64,000 nt of DNA from Pelomyxa schiedti (lineage: Eukaryota > Protista > Evosea). The stretch spans positions 6,447-70,446 of the forward strand of contig JAHLWZ010000859.1 of the NCBI GenBank assembly GCA_020536535.1, in the 5' to 3' direction. The position numbers were made by a program, and so were the translations under genes. The notes beneath the pieces were generated by a model. That model ran no database searches, had not been told where the DNA came from, and saw only the letters and a list, made by a program, of their open reading frames with translations. Shown piece after piece: positions 23,052-49,435 of this stretch. Each line of letters opens with the position of its first letter. Position 1 is the stretch's first letter.

Positions 23052-26000
23052 ATGGCAGACGAGGCCGTGCGATTTGGTAGCCCCTTTGTGTTTGTGGATG
23101 TGAAAAACGAGACAGAGGATATCTTTCAAGACGATGTGGAGGACGGTATTGCTGCATGTGCAGCTGAGCAAGCCAAGCTTTGGGCTGAGGAGGCGAAGGC
23201 GCAAGGGAAAGACCCTGCTTTCTTACGTGAACTCCTATCGTTGACAAATAGCTTAGCTTCCTCTGGTACACTTTGTTCGAACATCTCTATTACTTGTTGC
23301 CATCATTTTTTTGACACTTTTTTTTTTTTGTCACCATTTGAGTGCTGGTAGTAACTATTCGTTGCAGGCAAGCCTAGGTCTGGTGCTATGGGTACAACTA
23401 CGAGAATTCAACCACGTTTCCAAAAGGGAAAGCAGGCTGAATTTGATACCCGAGCCAAACGAGTGAGGTTTCTTCCTTTGTGACTTCACTTTACTGTTTC
23501 GTAGGTTGAAGAAGAGGAGAGGGAGAAGAGAAAGGCTTCCTCGAGTAGAGCGGAAAAGCTGAGAGCATTCGCTCTTGAAGAGGAGGCTAAGGCCTTAGCT
23601 GCAAAACCCTCCACTTCAGCTTCTGTTGTAACTGAAACGAGCACCTCTGCTGCTCCCCCACCCCCACCGCCACCGCCGCCACCTGGTATGGGTGATGAGG
23701 TTCAGGCTCTTGTGATCGAGCTTGGCAGTTGGTATGTCAAGGCTGGATTTGCTGGTACCTCCCATTCATTTGAGGCAGTTCAGTTGCTTAAAAAAAACAA
23801 GGTGATGACGCTCCAAGAGCTGTGGCCCCAGCTATCGTTGGAAGGCCAAGGCACACAGGTGTAATGGCTGGAATGGGAAACAAAGATGCGTAAGTCTCTT
23901 GCCCGTAGCTTTTTTTTATAGTTTACCTTTGATAGTTATGTTGGTGATGAAGCACAATCAAAGAGAGGCAAGATCTTTGTTTATTTCTTCTTGAACTCAT
24001 TTCTATAGGAATTCTAACCCTCAAATATCCTATTGAACATGGCATTGTTACAAATTGGGATGATACAGAGAAAATCCTTCATCATTTTTTTTACAAGTAT
24101 TCCCCAGCTTCTCCATAATTTCTTACTTAAGTCAGTGAATTGCGTGTTGCTCCTGAGGAACATCCTGTGCTCATGACAGAGGAACCTTTTAATCCTAAAG
24201 CTAATCGAGAGAAGATGACTCAACTACTTTTGTGTGTCACTAAGTTTGTGATGTTTACTAATGGATTCAGTGAGACATTTAATTGTCCAGCAGTGTACAT
24301 TACCAGTGCCCCACTTCTTGCCCTTTATGCTGCTGGTCGTACAACGGGTATAGTGCTGTCCCTGGGTGATGGTGTTTCGTATGCTGTTCCAATTTATGAG
24401 GGTGCTGTCATTTCTCACGCTGTACTGAGAACCTACATAGGAGGCCGTGATTTGACAGATTATGTACTGTTTCTGTATCGTTTTCGTCAATCTGACATGA
24501 AATTAGATGATGAAAATTTTAACGGAGCGCGGTTACTCCTTCACAACAACCGCTGAAAGGGAGATAGTAAGAGATATTAAGGAAAAATTGGCGTAAGTTC
24601 CTAAAATTATTGCATGAACTCTTATTTCCAAAGATATGTTGCTCTCGATTTTGAGGCGGAAATGGGAACAGCCGCAGCCTCCAGTTCTCTTGAGAAGTCT
24701 TATGAACTTCCTGATGGACAGGTTATCACGCTTGGTAATGAGCGATTCAGGTGTCCCGAAGCACTCTTCCAGCCATCTTTCATCGGAATGGAAGATACAG
24801 GAGTTCATGAAATGCGTAAATCGAACTCCATTGTATCCAATCTACTCATTCAAAAACCAAACAGTTTTCAACGCAATTTATAAATGTGATCCTGACATTC
24901 GAAGTACACTGTTTGGGAATGTTGTCCTTTGTGGCGGATCTTCAATGTTCCCCGGAATCGCTGACAGACTCCAGGCGGAATTAACAAATCTTGCTCCTAG
25001 CACGATGAAAGTGAAGATTATTGCACCTCCTGAGAGAAAGTACAGTGCGTGGATCGGTGGCTCCATTTTTGCCTCTCTTTCCACATTCCAATCTGCCTGG
25101 ATATCCAAAGAAGACTATGATGAATCTGGCCCTGGTATAGTTCATAGAAAGTGTTGGGAAGGTGGTAGTAGTGAATGTATTACACCAAGTCTCATATCCA
25201 CACTTCCCACTCCCGCATCTACCCCTACCTCTACCACTGGATCTATGTCCATTGTCTCCCATCCAGCTACCACAACGATCCCCTCTGCAGTCGCAAGAGA
25301 GAGTATTTCTACTGCTGCCGCACCTACGCCTACGCCCACTCCCACCCCGGCGCCAAGGGAGAAAACGAACACAATTGCGAAAGTGAAACCTCTCTCTGAC
25401 ACCAACTCAATGATGGTTCGTATTGGCACATTAATTGACGACCACTCAGCGCAACTGGTTGCAGGGAGGCCACTGGTGTGTTCCAACTGTGGTGGTGTTT
25501 TCAATACATACAGCAAAGTTGCTTCTGGCTTCTGGGGGTGCGAGTTCTGTGGCACGGGAAATGTTGTGCCTCCAGGAACCCCCACTTTTACGCAACCCCT
25601 GGTCGAATTCTCTCTCAGTGGAGCTGCCACTGCAGGAAATACTGAGCACATGATCGTTTTTTGTGTTGACGTCAGTGGTTTGTACCCTTTTCTGCTTTTC
25701 TCTCCCCCTAATCCACCTCAGGATCAATGAATACCCAGATCTCGGTTCCGTCAGGAGTCCGGCTCGGTGGTGAAGGACCTTCACGCAATACTGTCACTCG
25801 ACTAGAATGCGTGCAAGCTGCTGTTTCTAGTCAAATACGCGCTCTTGTTAAGCAAGACCCAACAGCTAAAGTGGGCTTGATAGCATTTGGTTCAAATCTC
25901 ACGCTCTTTGGTGACGGTACCTCATCACTTATGGTGGAATCTGGTCTCGATGACTACGATGCTCTTTTGAGACGTGCACAGGAGTTCCGAAGTCATTACA

Positions 26001-28362
26001 GACATAATGTGGATGAAACAGCCCCAGCTTTAGTAGAACACATCTCCCGCCTTCAGGTGGGAAGTGGCACAGCCTTGGGTCCTGCACTGGTTATGGCTGT
26101 AGGCTTGTGTGAAGGGTACCAAGCATCAAGGATTATCCTCTGTACAGATGGCCTTGCAAACGTTGGTGTTGGATCAATGGAAGATACTGGTGTGTACTCT
26201 GTTGCAGAAGAGGTGGAATTGGATCTCGTTTTTATTGTGGATTGTACTGGAAGGTATATCTTACACCGGCCTTTGTGTACACTAACACTGCTAAGCATGG
26301 GGTCTTATATTGCAGAAGCCCAAAAGAATATTAAACTCATCATTGATAAGATTATATCATCCGAAAAAGCAAACGTTCGAGTGGCCTTTGTTTCTTACAG
26401 GGATCACCCGCCGCAGGACACATGTAATTTCTTTCTCCCCCTTCCCCTCTAACCCTTCTACAGCCTACATTACTCACCTGGATGATTTTACCTCCTCTTT
26501 GACTGAAATGAAGCGGGCCGTTGATGGAATGTCTGCAAGTGGTGGTGGTGATACACCCGAAGCTGTAGCAACAGCTTTGCGAGATGCTGCCAAACTTAAG
26601 TACCGACCTAGTGCAACTAAGGTGGCAGTTCTTATTACCGATGCCCCTCCGCACGGATTGGGAGTATCTGGAGATGGTTTCCCCAAGGGGGAACCGAATG
26701 GAGTTGATCCCCTCTCAGCTGTTGACCAGATGGCCGCTCAAGGAATTGCACTCTACTCAGTTGGCTGCCAACCTGCCATTGGCCAGTACTTATACACAAT
26801 TGGGTTTATGCGTGCAATTGCTGCTCGTGCCAATGGCAAGTACGTTCCTCTGGAAGATGCCTCCCTTTTGAGCAATGTTATTATTGGTGGTTGCCGTGAA
26901 GAGCTGAGCCTCTACCGTAACGCCCTCACCATATTGGACTCAATGAAGGCCAATGGTGGTAGTGCAGCCAAGGCGGTCGAGGTTCTTAATGCAAGCGGGA
27001 CCAGAATTACTACTCTGAAGTTTGCTGATCCTGATATGGAGAAATTTTCTTCCGAAGTGGCAACAATCGTATCTGCTGCTGATCTTCCAGCTGCCATGCG
27101 AGAACTCTCTAAACGGAGACGATCTCCCATACCGTCAGCAGTCAAGGCTGGCGTCACTGTTGCAGGTTTCATTCATATCACTCCATTTACCTTGTTCTTA
27201 CTGTGAAAAGAGGGAAGCCCACTTACAGCAGATCATGTTTTGCGGGTGGTGAAAAAGTACGGAAGCAAGTATGATCAACTTGTACAGGCTGTACGCGATA
27301 TAGAGGCAAAGAGGCTGGCTCGACAAGAAAGTTCCACTCAGGATGCAGATGTATTCTACAGACGGGTGGCCATGGCTGCCAGAGCAGCTGGAAGTACAGT
27401 TTCTGTGCTCACAATGGAGGGTGAGGATTGCAAGCTTGAAAATCTTGGCGTGGTTGCCGACGCCACCAACGGGCAGGTTGTCTCTTGCCCTTGTCACCCG
27501 CCCCGCATTCCTTCCTCTAAGAAACAACAACTAGGTGGATGTTGTGGACCCCGTCAAGCTGCAGGAGAAAGCCGAGCAGCTTCTCCGCCGAGAAGCCAAA
27601 GCCATCGAAACCAAGATCGCCGTCCACTTTGGCAAGCACGTCGCGTTCCTCGCCGAGCCGACCGACGTCGTGACGCCGTTCGCGGTCTCCCGCGAGCTGG
27701 GCATCGTCACCAACGACGCCGACATCACCTTCGCCTACGGGCCCACGGAGACCGCCACCACGACGCTGCGCGCGGTGTCGGCGACCTCCGGGGAGCCGCC
27801 GGAGGACATGGTCGACCTGCCGTTCCAGGTCGTGCTCGAGTGGACCGACCCCAAGACGGCGACCAAGAGCATCAGGGCGCTTTCGGCCCGCCGCGACTTC
27901 GCGTGGGACCGCGGCCGCTGCGAGGCGTACATCGACAGCGCCACGGTGGCCGTGCGCGCGATCCACGCGAGCGCGGCCATGGCGCAGCAGGGCAAGTACA
28001 CCGACGCCAGGATCAACCTCGTGTCGACCCTGCGGCTGCTGCAGCGCACGCTGACGCTGGAGCAGCACTCGAGGGACTACATGTCTTTCGTTGTGCAAGC
28101 GGAAAAGCTGGACGGCTTCATGCGTGAGGCCATTGCTGCTGAGCAAGTAAGGCAGACAACAACTGGAGACCGCAGCAAAACAAGGGATGATGACGCCAGC
28201 AAGGTAAACAACTAAACCACACCTAAACTACCAAAACAACACCAACAACAAAAATAACTGCAGCACCACGCCTTTCCTAACGTCCACTATCTCACCATTC
28301 CTTAACAGGCCATGTACCAAATGAAAGCAGTCAGCTTGAAGGCATTCCAGAACCGAACGTAA
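23052..28362 (+). CDS. multidomain fusion: charged helix - Pro10 - actin - Sec23/24-type Zn finger - vWA (with inserted second vWA) - C-terminal beta/helical region
   Basis: About 17 exons join in phase from [15 protein letters not shown] to [16 protein letters not shown]. The actin C-terminus HRKCW continues without a stop into EGGSSE... inside a single exon (ORF 24636-25730). Confidence 0.9.
23688..25157 (+). other. complete actin domain within the fusion gene (8 introns)
   Basis: [30 protein letters not shown]...[29 protein letters not shown]...[12 protein letters not shown]...[20 protein letters not shown]...[32 protein letters not shown]...[17 protein letters not shown]...[14 protein letters not shown]. 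Confidence 0.98.
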
Positions 28363-28511
28363 CCAGACCCCATAGCAGCAGAAAAAAAAACTTGTTGTCA
28401 TTGTCTCACTTAATTCTGTTATTCGTTTTTTCGTTTGCAAACGGTGGCTTCCTGTTTCCATTAAAAACCACAGTCATCAAACCCCCGGCAGCTACAGACA
28501 GGCGTCCATCG

Positions 28512-31252
28512 ATGTCCACTCCTCCCGAGTACGATCTCGAAGCCGGGGTGCCCTACGACGTGCCGTCACACGGCGTGAATGCCACGGGCAAGAAGCAACA
28601 GCCGACGCCAACGCGGGCGCGGAAGACCGCCACGTCGGGTGCCAAGCGAGCGGGGCGGGTGCACCAGAACCACGGGCAGGCGGCGGCGGCGCAGCACGGG
28701 GGGAGGTGGAGGAGCCACGCCGCCGCCGCCAACAACGACGGCGAGGGCGACGCGGGGGGGGAGGGGTGCTATAGAAAGCCAGGGAGGTTCTTGTTTGGGT
28801 TCGTGCTGCTGGCCCTCGTGCTGTTCTTGCTGGTGGCGTGGTCCAGTTAGTACTATTTTCCCTCCCATCTTTCCTTATTCTCTCTCTCTCTCTCTCTCGA
28901 TGCATCTAAATATGATGTTCTCGTTCTAACCCTGCCTTTTTTTTTTTTTTTTTTTTAATTATTTGTTTTTGTACTTTTTGGGTCCTTTTTCAAGGAGGGA
29001 GAGTTGGGGATACACCTACTGTAAATGTGATTCTGGGACCACCCGCTGCCCTGGTCACTGTTTCTAAATCCGAAAAGCAAGGAACCGAGTTACCACTGCC
29101 CACACCTCCCGCCGTTGATCCAGACCCCCAAGAGGAGGAACCTGAAGGAGCAGTACAGTCTGGAAGATTACCACCAGTGGGTGAGCCCCCAAGGGTTACC
29201 CCTCCACCTCCTATTGCTCAACCACCCCCTGTTGCAGTACCTCCCAAGTTATCTGAGCAAGAAATAGCTAGAATGACACTAATAGAGGAACACCGTGCCT
29301 CTGTTGTCAAGGTATATATTCACTTTTATTCCAATGCACAGGGGATAGTTTTGAATCTCCCTGTATACAGGGAATGAGAGATGCCTGGGAGGCGTATTCC
29401 AGATTTGCTTGGGGTCAAGATGACTTATTGCCTGTAACTCACAGTGGTTCAAGCTGGCTTCGTATGTTCACCTTCTACAAAAATACACTGATCCAGGTAG
29501 ATCTTGGTATAACTATTGTTGACTCACTGGATACACTTTGGATTATGGGGATGCGTGATGAATTTAAAAAGGCTCGAGAATGGGTGGCCAACAACCTTGA
29601 TTTAAGTGTATGCCTGTTAATCAGTGTAGGCAAAAGTAACAACAGTCAGCCCTGGAATGAAGTCTCACTTTTTGAGACAAACATCCGAGCACTTGGTGGC
29701 CTTCTTAGTGCTTATGATCTCAGCAAAGATGATCTCTTTCTCACTAAAGCTCAGGACCTTGCTCACCGCTTTTTACCGGCATTTGACTCGCCAACAGGAA
29801 TACCATATACCTCCATCAATTTACGCAGGTTTTTTTTGGCATTCCTTTCCCACATGCACTCATATCTTACAGTGGGAGTGCCCGCAATCCTGGAAATAAT
29901 GGCTACACAATTCTGTCAGAAGCCGGTACTCTTCAACTCGAATTTGTATATGCAGCAAAGCATGCCAAAGACCCAGAACTAAAAACAAAAGTATCTGTTT
30001 TTGTTTGTTATTTTTTCTCAGCCCACAACAGGCTCTCAGGGTAATTGATAAAATCGAGGCTGCTGAAAAAGTGAATGGGCTATACCCTGTTTACATTCAC
30101 CCTAGCAATGGACGTTTTGATGAGAGTATAACTCCAAATATATTGGACCAAACACAACCATTCAAAAGATTCTCCAATTACTTTGGGTGCCCTTGGCGAC
30201 AGCTTCTATGAATATCTTTTGAAGCTCTGGCTACTCTTTGGGTAATTTCCCTAAATCTTTTTTTTTTTTTTTTTTTGTTTTTGTTTGTACTCATAATGGA
30301 TGGGGATTAATATGCAATTAACTTGGTGATTATTTCATTTATCCACCTCTGTCTTAGTTCATGAATCTTATTTTGTCTTTGTTGGATCTTTATTATTTTC
30401 CCATTTGTGTTCAGAGGTCCAGGCACAGAAGGTGACAAATACCGGAAAATATATGATGCCGCTATGACAAATGTTGTGGACAAGATGGTTCAGGTCTCAT
30501 CTCCTAGTGGTCTTACTTACATTGCTGACATGCGATGGTCGTCACTGGACCACAAAATGGACGAGCTGGTGATTTTTTTGAAATTTGTGTATTGTTTCAC
30601 TCATCCTAGGCGTGCTTTGCTGGTGGAATGTTTGCTCTTGGTGCTGTGAGACATAATTCTACAGAGCACCCCAACCCGAATAGCAACGTCCATTTTAAGT
30701 TGGGAAAGGAAATTGGCAGGACGTGCCATGAAATGTGGAAAAGAATGCCGTCAGGAATTGCACCAGAGTTCGTGGTGTTTTCTCCAGGCTCTGACTTCTC
30801 TGCTGGTGCAAGTCACTTCTTGCTGAGACCAGGTTTCCTCTCCTCAAAAACATCGCAACTTACTCACTCCAGAAACTGCGGAAACATTCTTTATTTTGTG
30901 GAGGTTAACTCACGACCCCATTTACCAAGGTACCTTCCTCTGCGTCAGCTGTTTTCCCTTACTTTCGGCCAGATTGGGGCTGGGAAATATGGCAAGCCAT
31001 AGACAAACACTGCAGGTGTAATGGCGGTGGATATTCTGGGTTAAGATCAGTGACTTCCACCTCCCCGGAAAAGGACAACAATCAGCCAAGCTACTTCTTG
31101 GCTGAAACACTCAAAGTACCACCTTCCACGTTTTCACAACAGCTAACATTCCCCTCCAGTACCTATACCTGCTTTTCTCACCAGACGACGTAATACCCCT
31201 GGACAAGTACGTTTTCACAACAGAGGCCCACCCACTATCCATTTTCCAATGA
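28512..31252 (+). CDS. class I alpha-1,2-mannosidase (GH47), type II membrane protein
   Basis: N-terminal TM ([18 protein letters not shown]) and Pro-rich stem; [87 protein letters not shown]. Confidence 0.95.
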
Positions 31253-48352: not shown

Positions 48353-49435
48353 TCAATCACTTTCAGCACCAGCCTTGACTTCCCAGTGAACACCATCACC
48401 CAAAGATGACCACACAGGCAAAATCCACCTGGGAATCCTCCTCAAGAACCCACAAGCGCCACGGCCACCAGCTCCACCCCCGAAAATGATGTTGAAGTTT
48501 CTCCTAGTGCCCAGGTCATACGGGTTGGTGTGAACAGCGGCGGTCCAGTTTTTAGCAGACATGCACTCGAGCGTGGTCAGGTTATGGGAGACCAGCCACA
48601 TGTGGAACACAAACAGCATCAACGGCGCGAAGGCGCTGCAGCACATGACGAGCGCCACGACCGAGACGACGCGGGTGCCGTCGCTGCCGCCCAGGAAGAA
48701 CTGGCTGGCGCCGGCGTCGCCGCTGAAGGTGGCCACGGCGAAGGGGGCGAGGGCGGCGGCGCAGAGGGAGTAGGAGGCGACGGCCCAGCCGAGCATCAGG
48801 ACGAAGAACTTGTGGTTGTGCCAGCCCACGCAGGTGTTGATCCACACGCAGTGGTGGTCCATGCGGGGGACGCACGCGCCGCAGTCGGAGCAGTGGTGCG
48901 TCCGCGGCGGCTTCTCCGCCACGCACAGCCGGCAGTACCGCCTCCCCGCCGCCCTCAGGGCCTCCAGCGCCTCCTTCCTCTCCCGCCGCCTCGCCGCCCC
49001 TGCCTCCACGTCGCCGTACTCGGCTCCGGACTCGGACTCGGCGCCGCTGGCCGGGTAGTACCTGCCGCTGGGGCCTCGCGCGGAGCAGCAGCCGATGCCG
49101 GAGCCGCCGCACAGGGGGCGGGTGGGCCGGAGGCGCACGCAGCGGGCGAAGCTGGCGGCCCAGGCGGCGGCGGCGGCGAGGTAGGCGCAGCCCAGCACGG
49201 AGGCCCACGCGGCGGCCAACGGCGAGGCGGCGCCGGAGCCGCCGCCCGCCGCGGCCTCCTTCACGGACTCCACGACCACTGCGAAGACGGAGACACAGCC
49301 GAAGGCAGCGATGGCAGGCGCCAGCGACGCACACGCCACACCCCCGAGCCACTTGCACGCCCTGGCGGCCGCACAGCAGCACCCTTTGCCCCCGCACTCC
49401 TCGTCGTTTTCGTCGTCATCGTCCAGTTCCATCAT
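48353..49435 (-). CDS. DHHC palmitoyltransferase (single exon)
   Basis: YCRLCVAEKPPRTHHCSDCGACVPRMDHHCVWINTCVGWHNHKFF, NLTTLE, NPYDLG..RNF; four TM-like helices. Confidence 0.96.
   Translation of the reverse strand: MMELDDDDENDEECGGKGCCCAAARACKWLGGVACASLAPAIAAFGCVSVFAVVVESVKEAAAGGGSGAASPLAAAWASVLGCAYLAAAAAWAASFARCVRLRPTRPLCGGSGIGCCSARGPSGRYYPASGAESESGAEYGDVEAGAARRRERKEALEALRAAGRRYCRLCVAEKPPRTHHCSDCGACVPRMDHHCVWINTCVGWHNHKFFVLMLGWAVASYSLCAAALAPFAVATFSGDAGASQFFLGGSDGTRVVSVVALVMCCSAFAPLMLFVFHMWLVSHNLTTLECMSAKNWTAAVHTNPYDLGTRRNFNIIFGGGAGGRGACGFLRRIPRWILPVWSSLGDGVHWEVKAGAESD

What the first reader, a model, noticed from the sequence alone, without database searches (positions are those of the whole stretch)
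23052..28362. Full-length actin embedded in a Sec23/24-Zn-finger/vWA protein: candidate new actin-fusion system
Seen: a complete actin domain lacks its own stop. HRKCW runs on in the same exon into a Thr/Pro linker, a Zn finger (CSNC-x17-CEFC, Sec23/24 type), a vWA domain (DVSGS...GTALGPAL...CTDGLANVG) and a C-terminal region. Three upstream exons also splice in phase onto the actin Met. Established: actin is almost always a stand-alone ~375-aa protein, and known fusions such as amoebozoan filactin and primate POTE-actin have other partners. From recall, the Zn finger-vWA-tail module resembles the C-terminal part of Dictyostelium circularly permuted Ras (CPRas1)-like proteins. Inference: actin occupies the slot held by the nucleotide-binding domain in that scaffold. 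The protein may tether an actin-like subunit (seed, cap or decoy) to a Sec23/24-like or metal-dependent adhesion module. I know of no described protein with this architecture.
Basis: partly seen in the sequence, partly recalled or inferred. Interest (0 to 1): 0.93.

Follow-up and report, generated by a model that had tools for sequence, protein, structure and literature searches.

The report
Actin embedded in Sec23/24-type scaffold
This amoeba gene belongs to a protein family, found in amoebae, dinoflagellates and a rhizarian and not described in any paper I could search, in which a whole actin sits inside a vesicle-coat-like scaffold and keeps only the surface that docks onto the growing end of an actin filament, so it may be a built-in filament cap or anchor.

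Summary
The gene has 17 exons and 1495 aa without a stop, identical to Pelomyxa schiedti KAH3745758.1 (named plain 'actin'); 12 of 16 introns are spliced in RNA. The fusion is not a one-off: over 50 full-length database proteins share it (Archamoebae, Tubulinea, Paulinella, dinoflagellates), and their scaffolds form one clade beside CPRas. Fold comparison shows that the N-terminal strand and the C-terminal half form one Sec23/24 core without the gelsolin domain; actin fills the slot that holds Ras in CPRas1. Across 24 lineages the actin keeps its pointed-end face (0.91 identity, 0.66 overall) and loses the catalytic/Mg residues (0.32; Q137, D154), the reverse of other divergent Pelomyxa actins. 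Best reading (0.5, inferred, untested): a non-hydrolysing terminal subunit that docks on barbed ends and caps or anchors filaments. RNA does not bridge the actin-linker junction by 31 bases. The scan noted the paralog on another contig before (s1-383157). I found no paper describing the family.

The parts
23052..23265 (+). Exon 1: N-terminal beta-strand motif (shared with CPRas and with Ras-less relatives) and family-specific helices; part of the Sec23/24-like core
   Evidence: model residue 1 of the Mastigella ortholog aligns to Sec23a residue 11; intron 23266-23367 spliced in RNA
23368..23462 (+). Exon 2: conserved family motif 2 (GAxGT..RxQPR.QKG), start of a long helix
   Evidence: pLDDT 86-94 for the helix in the ortholog model; intron 23463-23504 not seen in RNA, inferred from phase and homology
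23505..23687 (+). Exon 3, first part: end of the long charged helix, flexible linker, 10 prolines (23655-23684) directly before the actin Met; other members carry a WW domain here
   Evidence: sequence; RNA contig from 23596 spliced into actin; WW in P0092, P0036, P0073
23688..25157 (+). Complete actin domain, aa 165-539, over 9 exons; 78% identical to conventional actin; pointed-end face 97% identical; D11E, Q137A, A138P, D154S, H161Y
   Evidence: ortholog model superposes on actin with TM 0.99, rmsd 0.9
25158..25364 (+). Thr/Pro/Ser-rich linker, in frame after HRKCW, no stop
   Evidence: RNA contig 25151-25432 with 0 differences; disordered in the ortholog model
25365..25600 (+). Conserved pre-finger strand and Sec23/24-type C4 zinc finger (CSNC aa 647, CEFC aa 667)
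   Evidence: Pfam PF04810 1.3e-7, above cut-off; four Cys found in 43 of 57 full-length members
25650..26180 (+). vWA1 (Sec23/24 trunk type), first part, with an intact MIDAS-like DxSxS ... T ... D
   Evidence: Pfam Sec23_trunk 5.7e-6, VWA_2 1e-5; motif columns invariant in the family
26207..27284 (+). Nested second vWA domain of the stand-alone VWKA-like family plus helices (aa about 875-1191), inserted in the variable loop after the CTDG strand; seen only in this gene
   Evidence: Pfam VWA 1.5e-9; 734 homologs at E<=1e-30, e.g. 'VWKA-like protein'; Atlas 0.95; loop is 363 aa here, at most 37 in the other 70 members; junctions covered by RNA
27324..27600 (+). vWA1, second part (resumes after the insert)
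   Evidence: HMM match aa 1202-1277; pLDDT above 90
27601..27897 (+). Beta-sandwich domain (Sec23_BS-like)
   Evidence: strands in the model; Sec23_BS hits in relatives P0023, P0084, P0119; Foldseek Sec23/24 1e-18
27910..28362 (+). All-helical domain with the family's most invariant motif, then stop (28360-28362); no gelsolin domain follows
   Evidence: RNA contigs to 28405 with poly(A)

Best explanation
The protein is a member of an old, patchily distributed protist family in which an actin domain is inserted into a monomeric Sec23/24-type core (N-terminal strand, Zn finger, vWA trunk, beta-sandwich, helical domain; no gelsolin domain). Shown here: the architecture, its spread, and the pattern of conservation. 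Inferred: the actin domain has lost efficient Mg-ATP hydrolysis, packs against its own scaffold, and offers an intact pointed-end face (D-loop, 61-64, 191-208, 241-245). That is the face a subunit uses to add onto a filament's barbed end, so the protein most likely binds there as a terminal, non-hydrolysing subunit. The 700-aa scaffold on the opposite side blocks further growth and ties the filament end to partners through the MIDAS vWA and accessory domains (poly-Pro or WW, U-box, WWE, here a second vWA). It would be a barbed-end cap or anchor built from actin itself, the mirror image of Arp11 at the pointed end of dynactin.
For: Architecture in over 50 full-length proteins, many from complete transcript ORFs; named hosts Pelomyxa, Mastigella, Mastigamoeba, Pyxidicula, Copromyxa, Paulinella, Biecheleria, Polykrikos, Gymnodinium, Scrippsiella. 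Actin-bearing modules form one clade (SH-aLRT 98). In 24 lineage representatives against 17 other divergent Pelomyxa actin-fold genes: pointed face 0.91 vs 0.49 (p 7e-8; without the D-loop 0.94 vs 0.57); catalytic/Mg set 0.32 vs 0.76 (p 5e-7); barbed face 0.64, no better than the 0.66 average; its lateral part 0.46; pointed above barbed in 22 of 24 vs 3 of 17. Both longitudinal and lateral pointed-facing patches are kept, as a two-stranded filament end requires. Synonymous sites against Pelomyxa's own actin are saturated (0.27-0.35 identical codons, 0.82 between conventional copies), so this is selection, not recent conversion. D-loop letters follow the host's conventional actin (A45, N49 in Pelomyxa; K39, D48, V64 in dinoflagellates). 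AlphaFold pTM 0.75 for the 1181-aa ortholog despite two disordered linkers suggests a fixed actin-scaffold packing (inference from how pTM scales).
Against: No biochemical or cell data. The interface residue lists come from my knowledge of F-actin structures, not from coordinates computed here. The barbed face is neutral rather than destroyed (longitudinal part 0.70, cleft 0.79), and one clade (P0118 and kin) keeps a near-conventional actin with Q137, D154 and H161. I could not read the model's coordinates, so which actin face the scaffold covers is not shown. The control set is one species and may include other fusion proteins. Actin-domain phylogeny is unresolved once catalytic columns are dropped (AU p 0.72 for grouping with Pelomyxa's own actins).
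Confidence: 0.5

Rival explanations
1. Monomer captor or barbed-capped seed: the conserved pointed face binds one or two G-actins, and the protein either sequesters them or seeds filaments that grow at the pointed end, as gelsolin-actin seeds do; the poly-Pro stretch could feed profilin-actin.
For: Uses the same conserved surface; 10 prolines directly before the actin domain here and Pro-rich linkers in the archamoebal orthologs.
Against: Poly-Pro is not conserved outside this gene; conservation of both lateral and longitudinal patches fits a filament end better than a single monomer.
Confidence: 0.16
2. Sensor or decoy: the scaffold is a signalling or ubiquitin platform whose slot holds a copy of an abundant switch protein (Ras or actin); the actin copy baits bacterial actin-targeting effectors or actin regulators in phagotrophic cells.
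For: The slot holds cpRAS, actin or nothing. Members carry U-box, WW, WWE; the Naegleria CPRas carries a RING (PMC2430557); the closest eukaryotic structural hits of ArnB are WAV3 E3 ligases (PMC12852372). Most named hosts feed by phagocytosis (my knowledge).
Against: Most known effectors and regulators bind the barbed cleft (my knowledge), which is no better kept than in controls; strong purifying selection across three supergroups is not an arms-race signature; most members have no E3 domain.
Confidence: 0.14
3. Coat or adaptor: the core works like Sec23/24, assembling on a membrane with a small GTPase or a CPRas paralog, and the actin domain couples the coat to the cortex.
For: Fold of Sec23/24 over Zn finger, trunk, beta-sandwich and helical domain (Z 24.6; E 1e-18); Sec23/24 serve as structural parts of the actin-nucleating preconoidal ring in Toxoplasma (PMC12819142); cpRAS-type paralogs exist in the same genome.
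Against: 10-18% identity only; no gelsolin domain (alignment ends at Sec23a 621), which in Sec23 bears the GAP arginine (my knowledge); no evidence for dimerisation or membrane binding. This reading is compatible with the best one and does not explain the catalytic loss.
Confidence: 0.12
4. The subdomain 2 and 4 tips are kept for a non-filament partner such as the CCT chaperonin, or for the protein's own scaffold, and the actin domain is only a structural filler.
For: CCT contact sites map to the tips of subdomains 2 and 4 (from memory, not checked in a paper here); pTM suggests internal packing.
Against: Other divergent actins of the same genome have lost these tips; an internal interface would drift with the scaffold, whereas these residues match each host's conventional actin.
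Confidence: 0.07
5. Artefact: misassembly or read-through joining an actin gene to a neighbouring CPRas-like gene.
For: RNA contigs do not bridge the actin-linker junction by 31 bases; the spanning DNA contig is probably the assembly's source.
Against: The junction lies inside one exon; a second Pelomyxa gene (C562) and over 50 independent proteins, including complete transcript ORFs from Mastigella, have the same order; the N-terminal motifs flank the actin in all of them.
Confidence: 0.01

Closest known systems
CPRas1 (cpRAS-ZnF-VWA) of Dictyostelium and others, and the Ras-less ZnF-VWA group (PMC2430557)
   Same: Same scaffold: N-terminal strand motif, slot, C4 Zn finger, Sec23-trunk vWA, beta-sandwich, helical tail; sister groups in the module tree; equally patchy distribution; function unknown.
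   Different: The slot holds a complete actin plus about 110 aa of family-specific helices instead of a permuted Ras; the paper and its supplement do not mention actin.
Sec23/Sec24 (COPII inner coat) and archaeal ArnA-ArnB
   Same: Core fold: model 1-1181 aligns to human Sec23a 11-621, yeast Sec24 177-754 and ArnAB (Z 22-25).
   Different: No gelsolin domain, 10-18% identity, MIDAS-like motif intact, an actin inserted near the N-terminus; coat assembly not tested.
Filactin (Dictyostelium Fia) and POTE-actin
   Same: A complete actin domain in a larger chain.
   Different: [quoted passage not shown]
Arp11 (dynactin pointed-end cap) and Arp2/3
   Same: Actin-fold proteins that keep one polymer face and act at a filament end (my knowledge).
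   Different: They present a barbed face and sit at the pointed end; this family keeps the pointed face, so it should sit at the barbed end, and is fused to its scaffold.
VWKA-like stand-alone vWA proteins
   Same: The nested insert is 45-63% identical to them.
   Different: Here it is inserted inside another vWA domain, in this one gene only.

Membership tests
Conventional actin | Complete actin fold of about 375 aa | tested here: met
   aa 165-539; ortholog model TM 0.99 to actin
Conventional actin | Stand-alone chain ending at C374-F375 | tested here: not met
   164 aa before and 956 aa after; F375W with no stop
Conventional actin | Catalytic and Mg-site residues D11, Q137, D154, H161 | tested here: not met
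   E11, A137, S154, Y161 in this gene; Q137 kept in 7% and D154 in 10% of 58 members
Conventional actin | Polymerises and hydrolyses ATP | not testable with these tools
   needs biochemistry
CPRas1 (cpRAS-VWA) | Circularly permuted Ras domain G3-G4-G5-G1-G2 | tested here: not met
   No Ras family hit in any exon scanned; the slot holds actin
CPRas1 (cpRAS-VWA) | C4 Zn finger followed by Sec23-trunk vWA and conserved C-terminal half | tested here: met
Sec23/Sec24 | Zn finger, trunk, beta-sandwich and helical domains in that fold | tested here: met
   VIA Z 24.6 over 486 residues; Foldseek E 1.4e-18
Sec23/Sec24 | C-terminal gelsolin-like domain | tested here: not met
   Chain ends with the helical domain; alignment stops at Sec23a 621
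Sec23/Sec24 | Heterodimer, Sar1 binding, coat assembly | not testable with these tools
   needs biochemistry
Filactin | Long N-terminal extension (filamin repeats, my knowledge) with actin at the C-terminus | tested here: not met
   No filamin hit; actin is internal
End-capping actin-related proteins (Arp11 type) | One polymer face kept, the other lost | tested here: inconclusive
   Pointed face strongly kept (0.91); barbed face neutral (0.64), only its lateral part below average (0.46)

The most novel reading that the evidence does not exclude
An ancient eukaryotic family, kept in Amoebozoa, Rhizaria and dinoflagellates, uses a catalytically dead actin carried inside a COPII-like scaffold as a barbed-end terminal subunit, linking filament ends to a Sec23/24-type platform; it would be a new class of actin-related protein and a new way of capping filaments.
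Probability: 0.4. Interest if true: 0.92.

Novelty: new variant of a known kind. Interest (0 to 1): 0.8.

Why it matters
Actin almost never tolerates fusion, and the known actin-related proteins that cap filaments sit at the pointed end. Here a conserved family, hidden in databases under names such as 'actin, cytoplasmic 2', carries actin inside a Sec23/24-type core across three eukaryotic supergroups and shows a sharp, testable selection pattern (filament-docking face kept, catalytic site lost). It adds a branch to the actin/Arp family, gives the first functional handle on the uncharacterised CPRas scaffold (one slot, filled by Ras, actin or nothing), and joins two founding eukaryotic systems, coat-type scaffolds with archaeal kin and the actin cytoskeleton, in one chain. 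Dinoflagellates, whose actin regulators are poorly known, keep it.

Tried and rejected
Misassembly or read-through: rejected (paralog, orthologs, single-exon junction). Recent gene conversion as the cause of the conserved patches: rejected, synonymous sites are saturated; older conversion or domain replacement is not excluded. Monophyly of the fused actin domains: supported with all columns (SH-aLRT 97) but lost without the catalytic columns, and grouping with Pelomyxa's own actins is not rejected, so I rest the single origin on the scaffold tree and shared motifs only. Arp2/3-like template: rejected because the barbed face is not specially conserved. Sequence search of the C-terminal module against PDB chains found nothing; only fold search did. 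The fold of the nested vWA2 was poorly predicted (pLDDT under 50, mixed alignment), so its identity rests on sequence. Paper searches found no description of the architecture; the library lacks most subscription papers. and part of 52 had a wrong reference or mis-sliced rows and were superseded; two rows (P0264, P0284) were mis-sliced and fixed. The spliced model was searched exon by exon, by reference; the joined model was not sent to any search tool. It was translated only inside scripts (frame check, identity check, codon comparison); whole-protein work used tool-returned ids.
Full report
OBSERVATION. Six-frame reading and splice-site placement give 17 exons from 23052 to 28362 that join in phase to 1495 aa without an internal stop. 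One donor I first misplaced was corrected by RNA (intron 24232-24270). The translation is identical to the public protein KAH3745758.1 of Pelomyxa schiedti, named 'actin, cytoplasmic 2'. The actin domain is aa 165-539. It has no stop: HRKCW continues inside the 813-nt exon 11 into a Thr/Pro linker, a Sec23/24 zinc finger and the first vWA strand, and Pfam finds both Actin and zf-Sec23_Sec24 in that one exon. Single-cell RNA contigs (one sample, three runs) show 12 of 16 introns spliced, a contig that starts 92 nt upstream of the actin ATG and is spliced into actin, a contig that reads the last two actin codons into the linker, continuous cover of the 3' half, and poly(A) at 28405. RNA has a hole at 24740-25150, so it does not bridge the junction by 31 bases; the tool filters conserved genes, so the hole proves nothing. 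The spliced model was searched exon by exon; the joined model was used only inside scripts and never sent to a search tool.

After the CTDG strand of the first vWA the chain enters a second, complete vWA domain (aa about 875-1191) and then resumes the first. The insert belongs to the stand-alone VWKA-like family, is 55% identical to another Pelomyxa vWA gene on contig C831, and occupies a loop that is at most 37 aa in the other 70 members. It is a private addition of this gene and is transcribed.

A FAMILY, NOT A ONE-OFF. The last long exon found 289 representatives; nearly every hit over 1000 aa also carries actin. Two further searches extended this to over 50 full-length proteins. Named sources: Mastigella eilhardi, Mastigamoeba balamuthi (Archamoebae), Pyxidicula operculata, Copromyxa protea (Tubulinea), Paulinella chromatophora (Rhizaria), and the dinoflagellates Biecheleria, Polykrikos, Gymnodinium smaydae and Scrippsiella; many are complete transcript ORFs. 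Predatory dinoflagellates could carry prey transcripts, but their sequences form one clade with dinoflagellate-type actin letters. All members share two N-terminal motifs before the actin and an almost invariant helical tail, which validates exons 1-2 as coding. Accessory domains vary (WW, U-box, WWE). In a tree of vWA plus tail, the actin-bearing modules form one clade (SH-aLRT 98) apart from cpRAS and empty-slot proteins; members inside it without actin are all short fragments. The genome has a second fusion gene on C562 and several CPRas-like paralogs without actin, some with Ras pieces in permuted order. In the C562 gene the actin comes first and the N-terminal motif follows the tail in frame, a circular permutation that is not checked by RNA.

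FOLD. AlphaFold on the Mastigella ortholog with the family alignment gave pLDDT 85.7 and pTM 0.75, with only the linkers disordered. The actin domain matches actin at TM 0.99. The rest aligns, from model residue 1 to 1181, to human Sec23a 11-621 (Z 24.6, 486 residues), Sec24, and archaeal ArnAB; the window's own C-terminal module gives the same answer. So the first strand and the C-terminal half make one Sec23/24 core without the gelsolin domain, and actin is inserted into it. The permuted paralog fits this: the N-terminal segment belongs to the core, not to the actin.

WHAT THE ACTIN KEEPS. I mapped 24 lineage representatives and 17 other divergent Pelomyxa actin-fold genes onto conventional actin (residue sets from my knowledge of F-actin). 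Identity, fused vs control: overall 0.66 vs 0.59; pointed-end face 0.91 vs 0.49 (p 7e-8), without the D-loop 0.94 vs 0.57; barbed face 0.64 vs 0.59, its lateral part 0.46 vs 0.60; catalytic/Mg residues 0.32 vs 0.76 (p 5e-7); phosphate loops 0.55 vs 0.74. The plain 10-residue profile peaks at 46-65, 196-205 and 236-245, the tips of subdomains 2 and 4, so the result does not hang on my lists. In this gene the pointed face is 0.97, and D11, Q137, D154 and H161 are replaced. Synonymous sites against Pelomyxa's own actin are saturated, so recent conversion is not the cause. D-loop letters follow each host's conventional actin, by co-evolution or by old conversion; the actin-domain tree cannot tell. 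The p-values treat lineages as independent and the control is one species, some of whose genes may be other fusions.

MECHANISM. Shown: architecture, spread, fold, selection pattern. From established knowledge: a subunit adds to the barbed end through subdomains 2 and 4; Q137, D154 and H161 serve Mg-ATP hydrolysis; both actin termini lie on the barbed side. Inferred: the domain docks on a barbed end as a terminal, non-cycling subunit; the scaffold, tethered to both termini, blocks growth and links the end to other partners (0.5). Rivals: monomer captor or capped seed (0.16), sensor or decoy platform (0.14), coat adaptor (0.12), non-filament partner (0.07), artefact (0.01). Against the best reading: the barbed face is neutral rather than destroyed, one clade keeps a near-normal actin, and nothing has been tested at the bench.

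KNOWN SYSTEMS AND NOVELTY. The scaffold is the CPRas1-type module described in PMC2430557, which lists cpRAS-bearing and Ras-less forms but no actin form. It is not CPRas1 (no Ras), not Sec23/24 (no gelsolin domain), not conventional actin and not filactin (PMC2441452). Nine paper searches found no description; the library is incomplete. The scan noted the C562 paralog earlier (s1-383157); I had found it independently, and that note is not evidence. Verdict: real, conserved, mis-annotated and apparently undescribed; a new variant of a known scaffold and a new actin-related subfamily. Interest 0.8.

Noticed in passing
L005 2753-7545 (G000:C562:52252-57044): Second Pelomyxa fusion gene: actin first, no nested vWA, and the family's N-terminal strand-and-helix motif placed in frame after the helical tail, a natural circular permutation; its intron positions in actin differ from those of the window's gene.
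   Followed up: partly
window 27535-28059: Sharp codon-usage island inside exon 16: GC at third positions 0.94 against 0.31-0.49 in the other exons; RNA confirms the sequence with 0 differences, so it is not a chimera. The small gene just downstream is also GC-rich.
   Followed up: partly
window 23204: An RNA contig carries a template-switch oligo at 23204, a cDNA 5' end inside exon 1: truncated reverse transcription or a second start that would begin the protein at the GAMGT Met.
   Followed up: no
window 26729-26833: One RNA contig skips 103 nt with non-canonical ends and 5 bases of microhomology, probably a reverse-transcription artefact.
   Followed up: no
window 23968-24008: GC-AG intron within the actin domain, supported by an RNA joint.
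   Followed up: yes
L014 4300-6100 (G000:C831): The closest genomic relative of the nested vWA2 (55% over 303 aa) also follows another vWA-like domain, so this VWKA-like domain looks mobile in Pelomyxa.
   Followed up: partly
L006, L009, L010, L011 (C505, C133, C1100, C218): About ten CPRas-like modules in this genome; several have Ras-like pieces upstream, in permuted order in L006.
   Followed up: partly
G000, whole genome: 85 actin-fold matches, about 20 near-identical conventional copies with an unusual D-loop (G42Q, V45A, Q49N) and dozens of divergent ones.
   Followed up: partly
window 28510-28850 +: Short ORF of about 110 aa ending in one hydrophobic stretch, like a tail-anchored membrane protein.
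   Followed up: no
window 48356-49435 -: DHHC palmitoyltransferase (Pfam 3.8e-32); nine other long ORFs of the window had no Pfam hit.
   Followed up: no
L018 5001-8357, L040 323-3703: Intronless family members on metagenome contigs of unknown host (one of 2.07 Mb); the L040 protein keeps a near-conventional actin with Q137, D154 and H161.
   Followed up: no
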